From assembly GCA_002189035.1 (NCBI GenBank), contig NEEC01000023.1, forward strand, positions 496,001 through 560,000: a stretch of DNA of 64,000 nt, given 5' to 3'. Every line of letters begins with the position of its first letter. Position 1 is the first letter of the stretch. Source of the DNA: Utricularia gibba (lineage: Eukaryota > Plantae > Magnoliophyta). Below the pieces are notes generated by a model, which searched no databases, had not been told where the DNA came from, and was given only the letters and a program-made list of their open reading frames with translations. Positions 4,686 through 64,000 of the stretch are shown in pieces. The position numbers and the translations under genes were made by a program.

Positions 4686-5350
4686 ATGACTCTTGCCGGT
4701 GCACGGCCTCTGCTCAATTATTCTGCCCACGATCGGCTCTTAGCTGGCAGGGAAGTGAAGACCGAACGGCGGCCCCTGTTCCTCCAAAAGGTTAAAAAAA
4801 ACCAGCCCATTTCCAGTTGTCAAGGTTCCTCTCCTCCACGTGTCCGATCCGTGCCACGCGGTTCGGAATCGTAGGGTGGGAGGCTGGTTTCCCAACTGGA
4901 GATGAAAAGGAGGATCAATTATTGATGAGCAGCAACTGTAATCTGGTTATGGATTTTATTGTTCATGTTTACACTTTCCACAGTCCCAACTGTACCTTTC
5001 CATTTCTGCGTTGCATTGCTGCCAGAGGATCAAGATGGGGACATTGAAAATGATGTTTTTCGAGTTAGGGGATTTTGAAATGGGGAGAAGATGTAGGGAA
5101 TGTTCAGGTTCAGAGATAATGCACAAGATGAAGGTTAAATCACACATTGCTGACGTTTCCTGGTGATTTCTAGATTTGGGTAGCTGTTTGGTAATGGCTT
5201 TTAGAAGCTGAATGGTTCATGCATCAAAAGCACAACCCAACTTCTCGATATTCACTGAAGGAGGTCTGTTCCACCAACCTGAAAAATTACCGAAGCACGT
5301 GTCGTCTATCGAATGGAATTGCCTTTGGAGTTGTTGTACATTGAACAGTG
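4686..5350 (+). pseudogene. Probable decayed multi-exon gene of an uncharacterised plant family
   Basis: ATG 4686 opens MTLAGARPLLNYSAHDRLLAGREV up to a GT donor at 4791. Downstream fragments WEAGF, CVALLPEDQDGDIENDVFR and EVCSTNLKNYRSTCRLSNGIAFG lie in different frames with stops. Family resemblance is from memory only. Confidence 0.3.
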
Positions 5351-37697: not shown

Positions 37698-38756
37698 TCA
37701 GTCACGAACTTCATCGGACCGATTGTGGTTGTGCGAAAACCTCGGCCGCCTTCTCCGGCGATAACCGAGGTCTCTGGGGACGTTGAGGTCTTGCTCATCG
37801 TCCTCTGCACCATCTTCTTCGGCTTCATCGTCTTCTTCCATCACCTCCCCTTCAAGTCCCAACAGACTGCTCTCTCCCCAGAGGTACTGACGGGTGCGCC
37901 TCAATCCAGGAATCGCATTGCGATGCCCCAGGACTCCTCTGGACCTCCCGCCCCTCCTTGGAGCTCCGTCTTCCAAAGAACCGATCATCTGGAACAAGAA
38001 AAGGGTGCTCAGCCATCTCCCACGGTCGGCACGGCTTCCACTTCTAATCCGGTCACTGAAGGGTCTGTCCCCACTGTCAACAGCATAGTCGCCGACTAAA
38101 ATGGCACCAGGCATCGCTGATCGGATTGCGCTGACAATGTCATTCAGCTCTCTCTGGTCCTCCAGGCGATGCCACTCCCTCTGTCTAGATGGATCGACAT
38201 CGGCTGGACGTACCATGGGGTGATCTTTTCTGGCATGCCTCCGCAACTCACCGTAGTTTCCAGTGAAAGAACAGGATTCGTGGGAGCAGCTACGGGGTTT
38301 CAGGTTGAGGTACTTTCTTGTATCTTCCACAACCTTCCAGCCTATTACTGCTCCACGGCATAGAGGGCATTTCAGGGAGGTCATCTGTTCCACTGGCTCC
38401 TCAGCAATATTGGGTTGCCCGGAATTGAGCTGTAATGTTCCTCCTCGTCCTTCAAACTCCAAATTCCTGCTTGTTGAATCAAGAGAATCATGATCATTTC
38501 CTACCATGGAACTACTTACTGCAGACAAGGTCTCTGCAGTCTCTTGCTTTAATTTTTTAAAGCGATCCAAACAATTCGAGTGCCTGTAGCTTGTGTCACA
38601 AATGAACGAGCGGCATCCCATTTCATGAGAGCTGCAAATGATTAGAACAGCATTGTGAGGGTGATCCATGCATATCGGGCACAAAGCTTCATCCCACTCT
38701 TTATGTACGGAAGGCATATCTGCATCATTTGGTAAGCTTCTTTTTCTACTAGCCAT
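37698..38756 (-). CDS. DUF1644 family putative zinc-binding protein, intronless CDS
   Basis: Motifs EWDEALCPICMDHPHNAVLIICSSHEMGCRSFICDTSYRHSNCLDRFKK, LKCPLCRG, PRSCSHESCSFTGNYGELRRHAR, RQREWHRLE. Confidence 0.94.
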   Translation of the reverse strand: MASRKRSLPNDADMPSVHKEWDEALCPICMDHPHNAVLIICSSHEMGCRSFICDTSYRHSNCLDRFKKLKQETAETLSAVSSSMVGNDHDSLDSTSRNLEFEGRGGTLQLNSGQPNIAEEPVEQMTSLKCPLCRGAVIGWKVVEDTRKYLNLKPRSCSHESCSFTGNYGELRRHARKDHPMVRPADVDPSRQREWHRLEDQRELNDIVSAIRSAMPGAILVGDYAVDSGDRPFSDRIRSGSRADRGRWLSTLFLFQMIGSLEDGAPRRGGRSRGVLGHRNAIPGLRRTRQYLWGESSLLGLEGEVMEEDDEAEEDGAEDDEQDLNVPRDLGYRRRRRPRFSHNHNRSDEVRD

Positions 38757-56621: not shown

Positions 56622-58063
56622 ATCCACCAATTGGAGCAAAATTTCTCAATCCCAAACCACTCCCCAAAACACCTGAATCTCAAAGCTCATTTCATCTCCA
56701 TCCCAGTGGAAAAGATGCCATAAAATCGTCGGATCCGCAAGAAAAAAACAGAATGCGGATCGACAATCTAGCCACGATGAGGCAAAAGCATCGCCCACAA
56801 GACGCGAAAATCAAAACCCTAATTGGGGCCGTAAATTGACAAATTCATGGCAGCGACAACATCGATCTGGTTGCGGAGAGATCCACAAATGAAATGCTCG
56901 CTCAAAGACGAAATCGAAAAGATGGACCGGCAGCTAGCGAAAGATGAGGGGGAACAAAAGGAAACGACAGAAACAAATATCGAAGCACATTTTATGTTAT
57001 TATTTAACAAATATAAAATATAACAAACAAATAAAAATAATTATCTAAATCAATCATTTTTTTTAATTTTTTCATAAAAATCACTTTAAAAATCATAAAT
57101 TTGAATTGAATGTAATATGATTTCACAAACATGTTTCCATGCATGCATACACACATTCCTTGAGACCCAAACATGTGTGCGTCTTGTCCTTTAGATAGCA
57201 TGTTGAATGGTGTGTCACGATGATCATTGGGGACAATGTGCTCTACTTATCTTATACTATTTATTATTTTCCGTATCAGGTTACATGAAAACTTTAGTTT
57301 TGAATTCATACATCCAATCTAGTATTTCAATCAATATTCGAGTTTTAAAAAAAAATTAGACTTAGAATTTGATCGAACAAAATTTCGGATAAATTTCAAA
57401 ATGGGGTCAAATGTATGCATCCTATTTTATGTTATGTGTTTGGGGCCATAATTTTCAATTCCTTTGTCCAACCATACAAGTCACCCTTTCATTCTTTGAG
57501 CATCAAAGAAGGAGGTTTCTTATTATATGAAAATTTATTTTCGTATCAAATAAATTTCGCCACATTTATATCAAGTAAATTAAAATTTAACTTAAGAAGG
57601 TGTAGTAAGACTACCTCAAAGTGTAGCGAACCGTGTTATCTTGTTGAGGATTCTCTAAAAACCACATGGTGCTAGGGTTTTGATTTTCAATACCACTTAA
57701 TTTTCATCCTAAAACTACTCTCGTCTAAACATGGTTAACTTTTCAATAAGATCAAGTTAAGATGTTAAGTTATATTAACAGAAGCTACGGAATGGATATG
57801 TTTCAAGGATAAGTGGGAAAAAAAACGAGTCTAGTTTAAAAATCGAGTGTATGAAATCCAAAATAGTGGCATGGGAGGTTAGTAATTGTATAAGCAAAGC
57901 GAGAGAAGTTGGATGAAATGAAACTGCGGCCTAGGAACCATCTCAAGTTCGCCATCACATCAAGATCAACCCAATGCAAACTAGGGTTTTCTGACAAATA
58001 TAGAACAACCCTAAACCCTAAACAGACCCGAGACACTTGCAGGAATTGAGCTCCAAACTTGTT

Positions 58064-59134
58064 CTACTTCCTATTGGTAGTAGAGGGAGAGGGGAAATCA
58101 GTCCATGGAGAAGCTGCATTGCTCCAATGATCATTTCGCAGCAGCTTTGCTCCTGTGAATTGTCTTGGTAGATCCATTTCGGGGTTTTCTTCAGGTTTCA
58201 CTGGTTCAGATTGAGAGAAGAGTGGCTCCGAGTGCTTAGGCTGCAGCATATCGGAGACAATGAACGGCGACTCGCCGTGTTGAAACCCCGGAGACGGGTC
58301 CATGAAACCCAGCTGCGGCGCGTGGTGAAACCGCCACGCCTCGAGGCTACTGTCACTACACGAGAAAAGTGGCGCCAATGCACCGCCGGTAAGCAAATCA
58401 CCTCCCACTAGTTCAGGGGCGGTGTTGAAGTTTCCGCCTAGCTGCGGGATAAAGCGTAGAGGGGGCGGGATGAGGCCACCGTTGCCGGTTGTCGGAATAC
58501 CGAGGGTCCCGGGGGCGGTGGTGGTGGTTTGCCGGTCGCTTCTTGTCTGGGACTTGGAGGCGTTTGACTTGCTTCTTTTGTTTCTGCGACAACCACCGCC
58601 TACCGGGACGTTCCTCAACGCGCCACCCCTGGTCCAATACCTGTCCGAATATTACCATTATTATTATTTATGGAATAAACCCCTAAAGACTAATATTCCA
58701 ACAATACCTTCTGCAAGCCTTGCAGAAGTGACGCGGCTGAGAAAGGCTGTAGTTATTGAAGTAGCAAAACTTGGTGTTGGTGGAATCGCATCGGGGGCAT
58801 CGGAGAGCCGATTCCGGCATCGGAACATTAACAAGACGGGCACGCTCCGCCATAGATCCCGGCCGGATAGCTGCAGAGTCACCGCCCCCATGCGGCTGCG
58901 GCGGGATCAAACTACTGCCGCCGCTACTCCCAATCACCTGATGACTCCGAAGCTCAAGAAATCAAACAACAACAACAACAACAAAAGATAAAGAGAAAGA
59001 GAGAATATCTTCTTTATCTTTTTGCTTTAACCATGGAAGACTAAGGAAAGCAAAAGCAAGGAAAGGGAAGAAGCCCCGACCTGGTTCCAATTCGATGCAG
59101 TATCAAGATACGCAGGAAGAGAGGAGAAAGCCAT
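58064..59134 (-). CDS. DOF: Dof C2C2 zinc-finger transcription factor (OBP3/DOF5.1/DOF2.2-like clade), 3 exons
   Basis: Exons 59134-59081 ([18 protein letters not shown]), 58937-58708 ([43 protein letters not shown]) and 58640-58064 ([22 protein letters not shown]..). The Dof domain is split by intron 58641-58707. Confidence 0.95.
58642..58703. mobile_element. 62-bp TIR-bounded insertion forming an intron (introner/MITE-like)
   Basis: Begins TGTCCGAATATTA and ends TAATATTCCAACA (11/13 inverted match, TG...CA ends). Flanked on both sides by ATACC (58637-58641 and 58704-58708). Confidence 0.6.
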
Positions 59135-60010
59135 GGCTGCGGATCTTTAAAAATTCCGTGCTTTGTAAAGAGCATGTGGGTTCTTGAGATGGTAGTGGAG
59201 GATCAAAAGTGGAGCTGGAGGTGGGAATATGGAACCAGAGAAATAAAGCAAGGGGCTGCTTTATGCTGTGTATATTATATACACACACAACTCAGACGGG
59301 GAATACTACTGATCTAGATATGTTCCCACTCTGACTGGCTTCCATTCGTTGCTTTTTCTTGTTTTAAGCGTTCAAGGGACATACGCCATGTTTCAGCTTC
59401 CTTACTCCTTAGGTGTTCCCTAACATCTCATGTTTGAAACTGGGTGGGGCTTAGCTTTGCTCAGTTTCATAGGCGTTGCAGAACTAAAAAAAATCGATAC
59501 AAGCTGCCTAAAATTCATTCATCATCGTCTTCTTGGTATTTTACAGCACTGGTTCATGGCTGATCCAATTTGATCCGGGTTCAAAGTCGGGTCAAGATTT
59601 GGGTATAGGAGAGTAGCCTGGTCACCGGTCTAACTTGTGGTATGTGGTGAGGAATGTTCATCAGTGGACGCAAAACTACAAGAGACTTGTTACCAAATCA
59701 TCAAGTAGAATCGGATACGAAGAATGATTCGAAGAGATCGCGTTGAACACAATAGGTATAGATGTGGTGGTGTATGGTGCACATCTTGATTCAAGAAATG
59801 TCCATGGTTTTAGCTTCTTCTGGTCAGCAAAGGAGAGTACAAATGTATCAACAAAATCGTAGATACTTAGAAGTTTAAAATCATACCGACACCGGATTGC
59901 GGAAAAGTTTCCTTTGGTAAGCACCAAATTCCTTCTTTGGGGTTCAGCAAGCATGAGGCAGTTCCAACAGGGATTTTTCGAAGACGGACAACCCCATCTC
60001 AGAATGAGCA

Positions 60011-62380: not shown

Positions 62381-62785
62381 ATGGAGTTCCCGGCTGAGAG
62401 GCCCTCCACGGTGTCCTCCATTCTGCTAAAGCTTAAAGAGCACTCTCCCCACTCCGGAGAGCTCCTGGGTCTCTCCGCCCTCGTCATCTCCGGCGCCGTT
62501 CTCCTCCTCTTATCCGGAACCACCCTCACCGCCGCTGCAATCGCTCTAATCATCTTCGTGCCGTTGAGTATCATTACAAGCCCTGTGTGGCTCCCTGTCG
62601 GTGCTCTCGTCTTCATCTTAGGCGGAGCGGGTCTTTCGGTTCTCGGGTTCGCGGCGGCGACTGCCAAGACGGTTTCGTGGATTAACCGGTTCTTTCAGAG
62701 TGGGAATCCGGTTGGACAGACCCCGTTCGATGATCCGAGAACCCTGGCTTTCGATACGGCAGAGTATGTGACGGATGCTGCTTGA
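62381..62785 (+). CDS. OLE: Oleosin (lipid droplet protein), intronless
   Basis: About 70-aa hydrophobic hairpin with proline knot P-X5-S-P-X3-P (PLSIITSPVWLP) and short amphipathic termini. Confidence 0.93.
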   Translation: MEFPAERPSTVSSILLKLKEHSPHSGELLGLSALVISGAVLLLLSGTTLTAAAIALIIFVPLSIITSPVWLPVGALVFILGGAGLSVLGFAAATAKTVSWINRFFQSGNPVGQTPFDDPRTLAFDTAEYVTDAA

Positions 62786-63364: not shown

Positions 63365-64000
63365 TATAGAAAGACGGGTTACTTTAACATCTGAAGGTCA
63401 CATGCATCCCACGTGATATGGTCAATCAGGCCCGCTGGATTTAATAATTTTTAATTATATTCCAACAAAATAAAAATAAAAATAAATAAATAATTTGAAT
63501 TCATTCTTTAGAAATTGAACCTCTATTTTCAAATATACGGAATTTTAATTTGAAGGCAAGCGTCAGCAATGTGGATTAATTTGATTGATAATTGCATGAG
63601 GCCCCCGTTGGTCAATTGTTGAAAGGGATAGGTCACGATAGGGGAGGGGCATCGAGGATTGCGAAATTGGTCCACGTCCGAATCCGATGCGGGACGCTGA
63701 GAGACGAGCCGGTCGCTGACTCACTGTTCACCATCATCTTCAACACCTCCCTCAATCGTGCGACTAATCAATTATTTAATTAGGGTTTTAGGACAGAGAG
63801 GAGATTAGGTTCCTCAGCTCGCAACTGGGGAACGTCGATGTCATCGTCCATTGAGGGAATTCTGCTGCATTATCTATCATTTATAAAAACACCCACAAAG
63901 TTGAATACATAGGGGACCATGGTTCCCCCACCTCCCTTTCGCCATAAATATGTATCACATCACATATTCAAGTCGAGGGTGGGTTTTCTTGGGGGGCAAT

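What the first reader, a model, noticed from the sequence alone, without database searches (positions are those of the whole stretch)
58637..58708. Introner-like intron gain inside a Dof DNA-binding domain: 62-bp TIR element with 5-bp TSD supplying the splice sites
Seen: on the minus strand the Dof codons AGA AGG TAT TGG (R-R-Y-W) are interrupted as AGAA-GGTAT-[TGTTGGAATATTA...TAATATTCGGACA]-GGTAT-TGG. The 62-bp insert has TG...CA termini and 13-bp inverted repeats (11/13, with a perfect 8-bp core GAATATTA/TAATATTC), and is flanked by a duplicated GGTAT. The left copy provides the GT donor; the terminal CA plus the first G of the right copy makes the CAG acceptor. Splicing of the 67 nt (58707-58641) therefore restores the exact original codons. 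Unspliced, the frame hits TAG after 8 codons, yet the downstream 191 codons stay open. Known: angiosperm Dof domains are normally encoded without an intron (this clade has only the intron after the LDxxNW exon), and introners are transposons that create introns using TSD and TIR nucleotides. Inference: a recent, lineage-specific intron created by a tiny non-autonomous element or by repair-associated insertion. The longer overlap AGGTATTG also fits an 8-bp duplication or NHEJ-filler model. The insert contains a CCCTAAA telomere-like core.
Basis: partly seen in the sequence, partly recalled or inferred. Interest (0 to 1): 0.88.

Follow-up and report, generated by a model that had tools for sequence, protein, structure and literature searches.

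The report
Lineage-specific intron gained inside Dof domain
A plant Dof transcription-factor gene carries a real, cleanly spliced 67-base intron in the middle of its DNA-binding domain; related plant families lack it, and its ends still show the short duplication and inverted repeats of the insertion that probably created it, but it is not a copy of a mobile "introner" family.

Summary
On the minus strand a 67-nt GT..AG, phase-2 intron (58707-58641) splits the Arg codon of C-R-R|Y-W in the Dof zinc finger (Pfam profile positions 35|37).

- **Structure:** it is bounded by an exact 8-bp direct repeat, AGGTATTG, and has 13-nt terminal inverted repeats (11/13).
- **Splicing:** RNA contigs from three runs skip exactly these 67 nt. 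DNA contigs from two strains keep them.
- **Gain:** five orthologues from five other Lamiales families are uninterrupted. Paulownia and Handroanthus show the exact empty site AGAAGGTATTGGAC. So this is a lineage-specific gain. The host is Lentibulariaceae-like, because a neighbouring gene's best hit is Genlisea.
- **Chance:** the repeat extension has p of about 0.01 and the inverted repeats about 0.005, so both exceed chance.

- **Not shown to be recent:** at least one diverged Dof paralogue in the same genome, and probably two, carries an intron at the same site. The scan also flagged two such Dof introns on other pieces of this genome.
- **Not an introner family:** no other copy exists in the window or in whole-genome DNA contigs at 80% likeness or more.

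The most likely origin is one old insertion of about 60 bp with target duplication, by staggered-break repair or a now-extinct tiny element. The telomere-like 7-mer is at chance frequency.

The parts
59081..59134 (-). Exon 1 coding part: ATG at 59134, 18 codons ending ...S-N-W-N-Q (the LDxxNW-type N-terminal exon).
   Evidence: Sequence. An RNA contig of X5 joins 59081 side to 58937 side at GT..AG (joint 58935->59079, cut +2). Spliced CDS of 861 nt is in frame.
58938..59080 (-). Intron 1: 143 nt, GT..AG, phase 0. This is the conserved intron of the clade.
   Evidence: RNA joint skipping 143 nt. The same two-exon layout, a 16-17 aa first exon followed by one long ORF, is seen in the Sesamum and Salvia orthologues.
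58708..58937 (-). Exon 2: 230 nt encoding the N-terminal region and the first half of the Dof zinc finger (C-x2-C ... C-x2-C-R-R).
   Evidence: Pfam PF02701, E = 4.4e-18, profile positions 2-35 of 59. RNA contigs with 0 differences.
58641..58707 (-). The gained intron: 67 nt, GT..AG, phase 2, 28% G+C against 57-58% in the flanking exons.
   Evidence: Three RNA runs skip exactly 67 nt, with depth 0 inside. Present in DNA contigs of X1 and X2 (0 differences) and X4 (about 1% different). All junction words are held by five DNA runs. Composition.
58702..58709 (-). Left copy of the 8-bp direct repeat AGGTATTG (exon AG plus the intron donor GTATTG).
   Evidence: the repeat finder D2, 100% identity, spacing 67. 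Read laying reports 8 letters that fit either side of the joint.
58635..58642 (-). Right copy of the 8-bp direct repeat AGGTATTG (intron acceptor AG plus exon G-TAT-TG).
   Evidence: the repeat finder D2. The single-copy version sits at the empty site in Paulownia and Handroanthus.
58691..58703 (-). 5' arm of the terminal inverted repeat (TGTTGGAATATTA).
   Evidence: the repeat finder I4, 11/13. Statistics. It forms the base stem of the predicted intron hairpin.
58642..58654 (-). 3' arm of the terminal inverted repeat (TAATATTCGGACA).
   Evidence: the repeat finder I4. RNA fold of the intron gives -13.6 kcal/mol, z = -2.4.
58064..58640 (-). Exon 3 coding part: second half of the Dof domain ([21 protein letters not shown]) plus the C-terminal region, ending at the TAG stop (58066-58064).
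   Evidence: Pfam PF02701 profile positions 37-58. Best relatives are Lamiales DOF2.4/DOF5.1-type proteins, 42% identity. RNA contigs run on to about 57912 as 3' UTR.
58708..58728 (-). Perfect 10+10 palindrome (1-nt centre) formed by the last 21 nt of exon 2. Its right arm ends exactly at the exon-intron boundary.
   Evidence: the repeat finder I7, 100% complementary. It is predicted as a hairpin abutting the donor. The orthologues match only 7-8/10. Whether it played any part in the insertion is inference.

Best explanation
**Shown.** This is an ordinary-working but evolutionarily new spliceosomal intron.
- It is a 67-nt, AT-rich, U2-type GT..AG intron in phase 2.
- It splits the Dof zinc-finger domain of a DOF2.4/DOF5.1/OBP2-clade gene.
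- The site is empty in five other Lamiales families.

**Inferred.**
- The intron arose once in the Lentibulariaceae (bladderwort-like) lineage. That was after the split from those families and before the duplications that produced at least one, and probably two, paralogues with an intron at the same site.
- It arose by insertion of about 59-62 bp of foreign, AT-rich DNA into the codons AGG-TAT-TGG, with duplication of 5-8 bp of the target (AGGTATTG).
- The left copy then supplies the GT donor. The insert's terminal A plus the first G of the right copy supply the AG acceptor. Splicing therefore restores the original codons exactly.
- A duplication of this kind is the footprint of fill-in at a staggered break. 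The break could have been made by general double-strand-break repair that captured filler DNA, or by a transposase acting on a tiny element with inverted-repeat ends.
- No family of copies exists now, so I favour a one-off repair-type event or a long-extinct element over an active introner.
For: **Splicing.** Exact 67-nt GT..AG joints appear in 100%-identical RNA contigs of X5, X7 and X10, with no RNA depth inside the intron. Intron 1 is also spliced.

**Presence in DNA.** The intron is in DNA contigs of two strains and in five DNA runs.

**Intact product.** The spliced CDS is 861 nt and in frame, giving 286 aa. Pfam Dof matches lie on both sides, at profile positions 2-35 and 37-58.

**Empty sites.** Paulownia, Sesamum, Dorcoceras, Handroanthus and Salvia encode C-R-R-Y-W-T-R-G-G without interruption. 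Paulownia and Handroanthus read AGAAGGTATTGGAC.

**Taxon.** The Dof protein's best hits are all Lamiales, at 42% or less. A neighbouring DUF1644 gene is closest to Genlisea aurea (68%, 511 bits, against 430 bits or less for the others).

**Origin signature.**
- Exact 8-bp direct repeat.
- The ATTG extension has a chance of about 0.01.
- The terminal inverted repeat has P = 0.0009 in fixed register and 0.0047 in any register.
- It is the only such structure in the window.

**Age.**
- Paralogue contig X1 record 2 / X2 record 14 aligns from exon 3 through the intron site into exon 2, with 71-85 mismatches and small indels.
- Paralogue contig X4 record 25 / X1 record 4 joins 58643->58705 in DNA but 58637->58705 in RNA.
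- The scan notes s1-253242 and s1-233738 describe 67-nt and 83-nt Dof-domain introns elsewhere in this genome.

**Precedent.** Direct repeats of 4-12 bp of exon ends at the far end of new introns are the described footprint of staggered-break repair in Daphnia (PMC4202315).
Against: - No source of the inserted DNA was found. Matches to 500 nt of flanks, to the adjacent exon in register, and to intron 1 are all at chance.
- If the intron really predates paralogues that differ by about 15-20%, a neutral inverted repeat should have decayed further than 11/13 and the repeat further than 8/8. Either they are constrained (the 5' splice site, the codons, perhaps an RNA stem) or the dating is wrong.
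- I could not read the paralogues' sequences. Their introns are inferred from alignment tables and from unchecked first-stage notes. One of those notes could describe a duplicate assembly piece of this same gene.
- Logan contigs drop rare variants, so low-level intron retention cannot be excluded.
- No Lentibulariaceae orthologue (Genlisea, Pinguicula, other Utricularia) was available, so the time of gain is bracketed only loosely.
Confidence: 0.68

Rival explanations
1. Introner-like or MITE-type transposon. A tiny non-autonomous DNA element (62 bp, 13-bp inverted-repeat ends, 5-bp target duplication) inserted here, and its target duplication supplies the splice sites. It would belong to a family that also created other introns in this genome.
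For: - The direct repeat plus terminal inverted repeats lie in exact terminal register and exceed chance.
- Splicing restores the codons exactly, as described for introners whose target duplication is co-opted as a splice site (PMC9860276).
- The scan holds 27 unchecked notes of candidate gained introns with flanking direct repeats in this genome.
Against: - There is no second copy in 64 kb.
- In whole-genome DNA contig sets laid at 80% likeness or more, the intron bin carries only this locus (X4: 34.6 = one contig), plus one paralogue in X1 and X2. The neighbouring Dof-domain bins, by contrast, attract many paralogues.
- The other noted introns have direct repeats of different lengths and sequences (5, 7, 11 and 12 bp), which does not suggest one transposase.
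- From my knowledge of transposon classification, a 5-bp target duplication fits none of the usual plant DNA-transposon superfamilies. Under the 8-bp (hAT-like) reading the inverted arms are out of register by one base.
- No introner was found in any land plant among 3,325 genomes (PMC9860276).
Confidence: 0.12
2. The intron was gained by another route, such as reverse splicing of an existing intron into an AG|GT proto-splice site or intronization. On this view the 8-bp repeat and the inverted repeats are chance, or later products of selection for splice-site strength or RNA structure.
For: - Four of the eight repeat bases (AG|GT) come free with any intron at a proto-splice site.
- GTAT is a common donor start.
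- The pre-mRNA around the intron is predicted to be unusually structured: z = -3.9 for 120 nt, with 0 of 200 shuffles as stable. Selection for a stem could maintain inverted repeats.
- The repeats look too well preserved for an intron older than the paralogue split.
Against: - If the two features are independent, the joint chance of the ATTG extension (about 0.01) and the terminal inverted repeat (about 0.005) is small.
- There is no similarity to intron 1 of the same gene.
- Intronization of coding sequence is excluded, because the orthologues have no extra codons at the site.
Confidence: 0.15
3. Ancient intron of the Dof family, retained here and lost in the other lineages examined.
For: It is shared by more than one paralogue in this genome.
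Against: - Five orthologues from five Lamiales families lack it.
- Other Dof paralogues in the same DNA runs read straight through R-R-Y-W-T-K-G-G and C-R-R-Y-W-T-H-G-G (loose ends).
- The exact single-copy target at the empty sites fits insertion, not five precise losses.
Confidence: 0.03
4. Pseudogene disrupted by a 62-bp insertion. The apparent splicing would then be a reverse-transcriptase template-switch artefact between the two 8-bp repeats across a hairpin.
For: Direct repeats flanking a hairpin are the classic substrate for template-switching artefacts.
Against: - The joined form is the only form assembled in three runs from two studies, and depth inside the segment is zero. Such artefacts are minority products.
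- The boundaries are canonical GT..AG.
- The 191 downstream codons are open and the Dof domain is fully conserved.
- The site is kept in paralogues.
Confidence: 0.01

Closest known systems
Neointrons formed by repair of staggered double-strand breaks (Daphnia pulex; PMC4202315)
   Same: - A short new intron sits at a site that is empty in relatives.
[quoted passage not shown]
- The inserted DNA has no identifiable source.
   Different: - This one is in an angiosperm.
- It is fixed rather than polymorphic: both strains examined carry it.
- It is apparently older than gene duplications in the lineage.
- It also has terminal inverted repeats, which that model does not predict.
Introners / introner-like elements (Micromonas, Aureococcus, Symbiodinium, fungi; PMC9860276, PMC3609843)
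   Same: - Target-site duplication plus terminal inverted repeats.
- One splice site is carried by the insert and the other is completed by the duplicated target.
- Splicing leaves the mRNA unchanged.
- A stable predicted hairpin.
   Different: - No family of copies exists here, and a multi-copy family is the defining property of introners.
- None has been reported in land plants.
- 62 bp is shorter than described introners.
Introns created by tandem duplication of an AGGT-containing exon segment (Rogers model; recalled from memory)
   Same: A direct repeat containing AGGT lies at both intron ends, so donor and acceptor are copies of one exon motif.
   Different: The interior of the intron is not a copy of the adjacent exon: 21/67 and 20/67 identities in register, and local alignment P = 0.35-0.49.
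Typical angiosperm DOF2.4/DOF5.1/OBP2-clade genes
   Same: The short first exon ends in the NW(Q/H)Q motif, followed by a conserved phase-0 intron. The Dof domain and the C-terminal motifs are conserved.
   Different: The orthologues encode everything after the first intron in one exon. This gene has the extra intron at Dof profile position 36, and its C-terminal region has diverged fast (42% identity).

Membership tests
Spliceosomal U2-type intron | GT..AG boundaries and removal from mature RNA | tested here: met
   Joint skipping 67 nt with CT..AC ends on the + strand in the RNA contigs of three runs, and depth 0 inside. The donor GTATTG is not the U12 consensus (sequence).
Spliceosomal U2-type intron | AT/U-rich relative to the flanking exons (a plant intron property) | tested here: met
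   28% G+C in the intron against 58% and 56% in exons 2 and 3.
Introners / introner-like elements | Many near-identical copies serving as introns in unrelated genes of the same genome | tested here: not met
   No other copy in the window. At 80% likeness or more, whole-genome DNA contigs add no depth on the intron beyond this locus and one Dof paralogue. Limit: a full-genome search at lower identity was not possible.
Introners / introner-like elements | Target-site duplication and/or terminal inverted repeats | tested here: met
   Direct repeat of 8 bp (or 5 bp outside the arms) and inverted repeat of 11/13. P = 0.0009-0.005.
Introners / introner-like elements | Splice sites supplied by the element plus the duplication, so that the mRNA is unchanged | tested here: met
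   The spliced RNA equals the empty-site sequence of Paulownia at the junction, AGAAGGTATTGGACC.
Staggered-break-repair neointron (Daphnia type) | Direct repeat of the exon end at the opposite intron end, longer than the AG|GT expected at a proto-splice site | tested here: met
   8 bp exact. The four extra bases have a chance of about 0.01.
Staggered-break-repair neointron (Daphnia type) | Absence at the orthologous site in relatives | tested here: met
   Five Lamiales orthologues are uninterrupted. The sister genera within Lentibulariaceae could not be examined.
Staggered-break-repair neointron (Daphnia type) | Recent origin or presence/absence polymorphism | tested here: not met
   The intron is present in both strains, and the site is shared with diverged paralogues.
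Tandem-duplication intron | The intron body is homologous to the adjacent exon | tested here: not met
   Identity in register is 21/67 and 20/67. Local alignment scores are at shuffle level.
Dof zinc-finger transcription factor (PF02701) | Dof domain with four Cys and the conserved C-terminal half | tested here: met
   Pfam E = 4.4e-18 for exon 2 (profile 2-35) and 1.3e-07 for exon 3 (profile 37-58). Full spliced translation.
Known plant DNA-transposon superfamilies (hAT, PIF, Tc1/mariner, MULE, CACTA) | Characteristic target-duplication length and terminal motif | tested here: inconclusive
   A 5-bp duplication fits none of them. The 8-bp (hAT-like) reading puts the arms one base out of register, and the termini are not of the hAT type. 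This comparison is from memory, since no repeat library was available.

The most novel reading that the evidence does not exclude
The Dof intron is one visible case of a lineage-wide wave of intron creation in a bladderwort-type compact genome. On this reading, many short introns (about 60-120 nt) were inserted into normally uninterrupted coding regions, each flanked by a direct repeat of 5-12 bp. The process could be Daphnia-like staggered-break repair, or an as yet unrecognised introner-like process. No introner has been found in any land plant so far.
Probability: 0.22. Interest if true: 0.85.

Novelty: new member of a known kind. Interest (0 to 1): 0.5.

Why it matters
Well-documented intron gains in flowering plants are rare. 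Cases that still show how the intron was made are rarer.

This case combines several things:
- a gain in one of the most conserved plant DNA-binding domains;
- RNA proof of splicing;
- an exact empty site in relatives;
- a preserved origin footprint, made of a target duplication plus inverted ends.

It therefore gives a concrete angiosperm test case for two models of intron birth: break repair and transposon insertion.

The scan's many similar, still unchecked, notes for this genome may hold up. If they do, a fast-evolving miniature plant genome would be an unexpected place where intron gain is ongoing alongside genome shrinkage.

Tried and rejected
1. **Other copies of the element.** The arm pattern with up to 2 mismatches gave 7 hits against 3.5 expected, and none was paired. 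blastn-short of the intron against the window gave only 12-mers of low complexity. No family.
2. **Templated filler from the flanks (polymerase-theta style).** The longest shared word with 500 nt either side, on both strands, is 8 nt. That is typical of shuffles.
3. **Tandem duplication of the neighbouring exon, and transposition of intron 1.** Both are at chance.
4. **Telomere-like core as a clue.** It occurs at chance frequency.
5. **Finding the Lentibulariaceae orthologue.**
   - The protein database holds no closer relative than 42%.
   - The exon-2 search found only a Genlisea Dof of another clade.
   - The Genlisea contig carrying the neighbouring DUF1644 gene is not syntenic beyond that gene.
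6. **Fetching the paralogues' DNA.** The window's genome is not in the protein or contig look-ups (no self hits).
7. **Scanning the window for more short GT..AG segments with long junction repeats.** Only this intron stands out. Two weak extras appeared, at 4778-4824 and 63397-63631, both unverified.
8. **Rfam and tRNA scans of the window.** Nothing found.
9. **Literature.** The searched library holds no report of nuclear intron gain in Utricularia, nor of an intron at this Dof position.

Full report
**What is there.**

Read on the minus strand, the gene has this layout:

| Feature | Coordinates | Notes |
|---|---|---|
| Exon 1 | 59134-59081 | 18 codons, ending S-N-W-N-Q |
| Intron 1 | 59080-58938 | 143 nt |
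| Exon 2 | 58937-58708 | |
| Intron 2 (the finding) | 58707-58641 | 67 nt |
| Exon 3 | 58640-58064 | includes the TAG stop |

- Joined, the exons give an 861-nt open frame and a 286-aa protein.
- Pfam places Dof profile positions 2-35 at the end of exon 2 and positions 37-58 at the start of exon 3.
- The intron therefore sits in phase 2 inside the Arg codon of C-R-R|Y-W.
- Left unspliced, the frame stops after Y-C-W-N-I-S-L.

**Is it spliced?**

Yes. Contigs assembled from three RNA runs (X5 and X7 from one study, X10 from another) are identical to the window. They jump from 58634 to 58702, skipping exactly 67 nt.

- Eight letters fit either side of the joint, and the GT..AG reading is available. 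No RNA contig covers the inside of the intron.
- One contig also shows intron 1 spliced at GT..AG.
- DNA contigs keep the 67 nt. X1 and X2 match with no differences, and X4, a strain about 1% different, has no gap.
- All sampled words across the junctions are held by five DNA runs.
- Logan contigs drop rare variants, so a low level of retention cannot be excluded.
- A reverse-transcriptase template-switch artefact would explain a minority product. It would not explain the only assembled product in three runs, with canonical ends and an intact downstream frame.

**Is it more than chance?**

- The 8-bp direct repeat AGGTATTG is exact, and the 13-nt terminal arms match 11/13.
- Four of the eight repeat bases are expected at any AG|GT proto-splice site. 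The other four (ATTG) have a chance of about 0.01 from intron composition.
- With the repeat and splice sites held fixed and the inner 59 nt shuffled with dinucleotides preserved, an 11/13 arm pair occurs at P = 0.0009 in the observed register. It occurs at P = 0.0047 in any register within 8 nt of the ends.
- AT-rich 62-mers of the window give about 0.001. This is the only 5-bp direct repeat plus 11/13 inverted-repeat structure with a 40-150 nt insert in the 64 kb.
- The intron RNA folds into a hairpin closed by the arms: -13.6 kcal/mol, z = -2.4.
- The telomere-like 7-mer is at chance frequency, 9 found against 9.15 expected.

**Is it a gain?**

- The C-terminal part finds only Lamiales DOF2.4/DOF5.1-type proteins as best relatives, at 42% identity or less.
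- I fetched the genomic loci of five of them: Paulownia, Sesamum, Dorcoceras, Handroanthus and Salvia, from five families.
- All five encode ...F-C-K-T-C-R-R-Y-W-T-R-G-G... without interruption.
- Paulownia and Handroanthus read AGAAGGTATTGGAC, which is the window's sequence with the 67 nt and one repeat copy removed.
- Sesamum and Salvia have the expected two-exon structure, a 16-17 aa first exon followed by one ORF.
- Other Dof paralogues in the same DNA runs also read straight through R-R-Y-W (loose ends).

A lineage-specific gain is therefore far more economical than repeated precise loss.

**Which lineage?**

- A neighbouring single-exon DUF1644 gene is closest to Genlisea aurea: 68% identity and 511 bits, against 430 bits or less for every other plant.
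- The window is gene-dense and its proteins are fast-evolving.
- This points to Lentibulariaceae. The run history (a 2013 genome, a 2021 bisulfite-type run) suggests a bladderwort, but that is my inference.

**How old?**

It is not demonstrably recent.

- **First paralogue.** In the DNA runs of the window's own strain, a second contig (X1 record 2, X2 record 14) has similar depth, 71-85 mismatches and 25 gap letters. It aligns from exon 3 through the intron site into exon 2, with only small deletions inside the intron. A diverged paralogue therefore has an intervening sequence of about the same size at the same place.
- **Second paralogue.** Its mRNA joins 58637->58705. Its DNA contigs join 58643->58705 with unknown letters between, so they keep the CAG acceptor. 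This also suggests an intron there.
- **Scan notes.** Independently, the first stage flagged a 67-nt Dof-domain intron with an exact 8-bp repeat and an 83-nt one with a 5-bp repeat, on other pieces of this genome. I could not read those sequences. One of them might be a duplicate assembly piece of this same gene.

Taken together, the gain most likely predates the duplications that produced these paralogues.

**Is it an introner?**

The architecture fits what is described for introners: target duplication, inverted ends, and splice sites completed by the duplication (PMC9860276). The defining property does not fit.

- There is no second copy in the window.
- With whole-genome DNA contigs laid at 80% likeness or more, the intron bin carries only this locus (X4: 34.6 = one contig), plus one paralogue in X1 and X2.
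- The adjacent Dof-domain bins, by contrast, attract many paralogues, with pieces as short as 36 nt.
- That survey found no introners in land plants.

I therefore do not file it as an introner.

**Where did the DNA come from?**

Unknown.

- There is no above-chance match to 500 nt of either flank on either strand, to the adjacent exon in register (21/67 and 20/67), or to intron 1.
- This rejects tandem exon duplication, and it gives no support to local templated filler.
- What remains is an insertion with a 5-8 bp target duplication. That is the footprint of fill-in at a staggered break, as described for new Daphnia introns with 4-12 bp exon-end repeats (PMC4202315).
- The break could have been made by a transposase acting on a tiny element that has left no relatives.

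**Loose ends.**

1. If the intron is older than paralogues 15-20% diverged, the arms (11/13) and the repeat (8/8) are better preserved than neutral decay predicts. Constraint from the donor site, from the R-Y-W codons, and perhaps from an RNA stem may explain this. The 120-nt pre-mRNA segment is predicted to be unusually structured (z = -3.9).
2. The last 21 nt of exon 2 form a perfect 10+10 palindrome that ends exactly at the exon-intron boundary (I7). The orthologues have only 7-8/10 there. This may mark a break-prone site, or it may be coincidence.
3. The scan holds 27 unchecked notes of candidate gained introns in this genome, several with exact 7-12 bp flanking repeats. If they are real, this intron belongs to a wider process. 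I could not test that from this window.

**Verdict.**

The intron is real and spliced, and it is a lineage-specific gain with a genuine insertion footprint. The 'recent' and 'introner-like' labels are not supported. It is a new, well-documented member of a known kind: intron gain by insertion with target duplication.

Noticed in passing
window 58708-58728 (minus strand): The last 21 nt of exon 2 (codons F-C-K-A-C-R-R) form a perfect 10+10 palindrome with a 1-nt centre. It ends exactly at the exon-intron boundary. The intron-less orthologues match only 7-8/10 at the same codons. It may be a break-prone site, or coincidence.
   Followed up: partly
window 58621-58740 (minus strand): The pre-mRNA around the intron is predicted to be unusually structured (-37.8 kcal/mol, z = -3.9, 0 of 200 shuffles as stable). 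It shows an exon-end hairpin, four unpaired donor bases (GUAU), an intron hairpin closed by the inverted arms, and exon 2-exon 3 pairing outside.
   Followed up: partly
window 58009-58022 (minus strand, 3' UTR of the Dof gene): Two tandem telomere-type units (TTTAGGG x2) lie in the 3' UTR, with AAACCCTAG-like motifs further downstream. The window-wide count of the 7-mer is at chance.
   Followed up: partly
other pieces of the same genome (scan notes s1-195052, s1-191016, s1-206364, s1-186830, s1-212875, s1-186784, s1-227942): The scan holds 27 first-stage notes of candidate gained introns in this genome. Several are short (68-116 nt) and flanked by exact direct repeats of 5-12 bp, in normally uninterrupted genes (NGATHA B3 domain, STOP2, PUB22/23, UGT79). 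This may indicate a genome-wide process. The notes are unchecked.
   Followed up: no
window 37701-38756 (minus strand) and locus L006: The DUF1644 gene's closest relative is in Genlisea aurea (68%). The 14-kb Genlisea stretch around it shares no other gene with the window, so local synteny is lost or the regions are paralogous.
   Followed up: yes
window 63397-63631 (+ strand): A 235-nt AT-rich GT..AG segment lies between open, GC-richer flanks and has a 7-bp junction repeat (AG|GTCAC). It contains a 12-nt match to the Dof intron's 5' arm on the opposite strand (63457-63468), which is probably chance. There is no RNA evidence.
   Followed up: no
run X18 laid on window 57900-59300: The differences are almost all C>T (54) and G>A (38), the pattern of a bisulfite-converted library. 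That run is useless for presence/absence calls.
   Followed up: no
window 62381-62785 (+ strand): A 134-aa ORF has a long hydrophobic core and a proline-knot-like motif, so it looks like an oleosin. It appears to be an ordinary gene.
   Followed up: no
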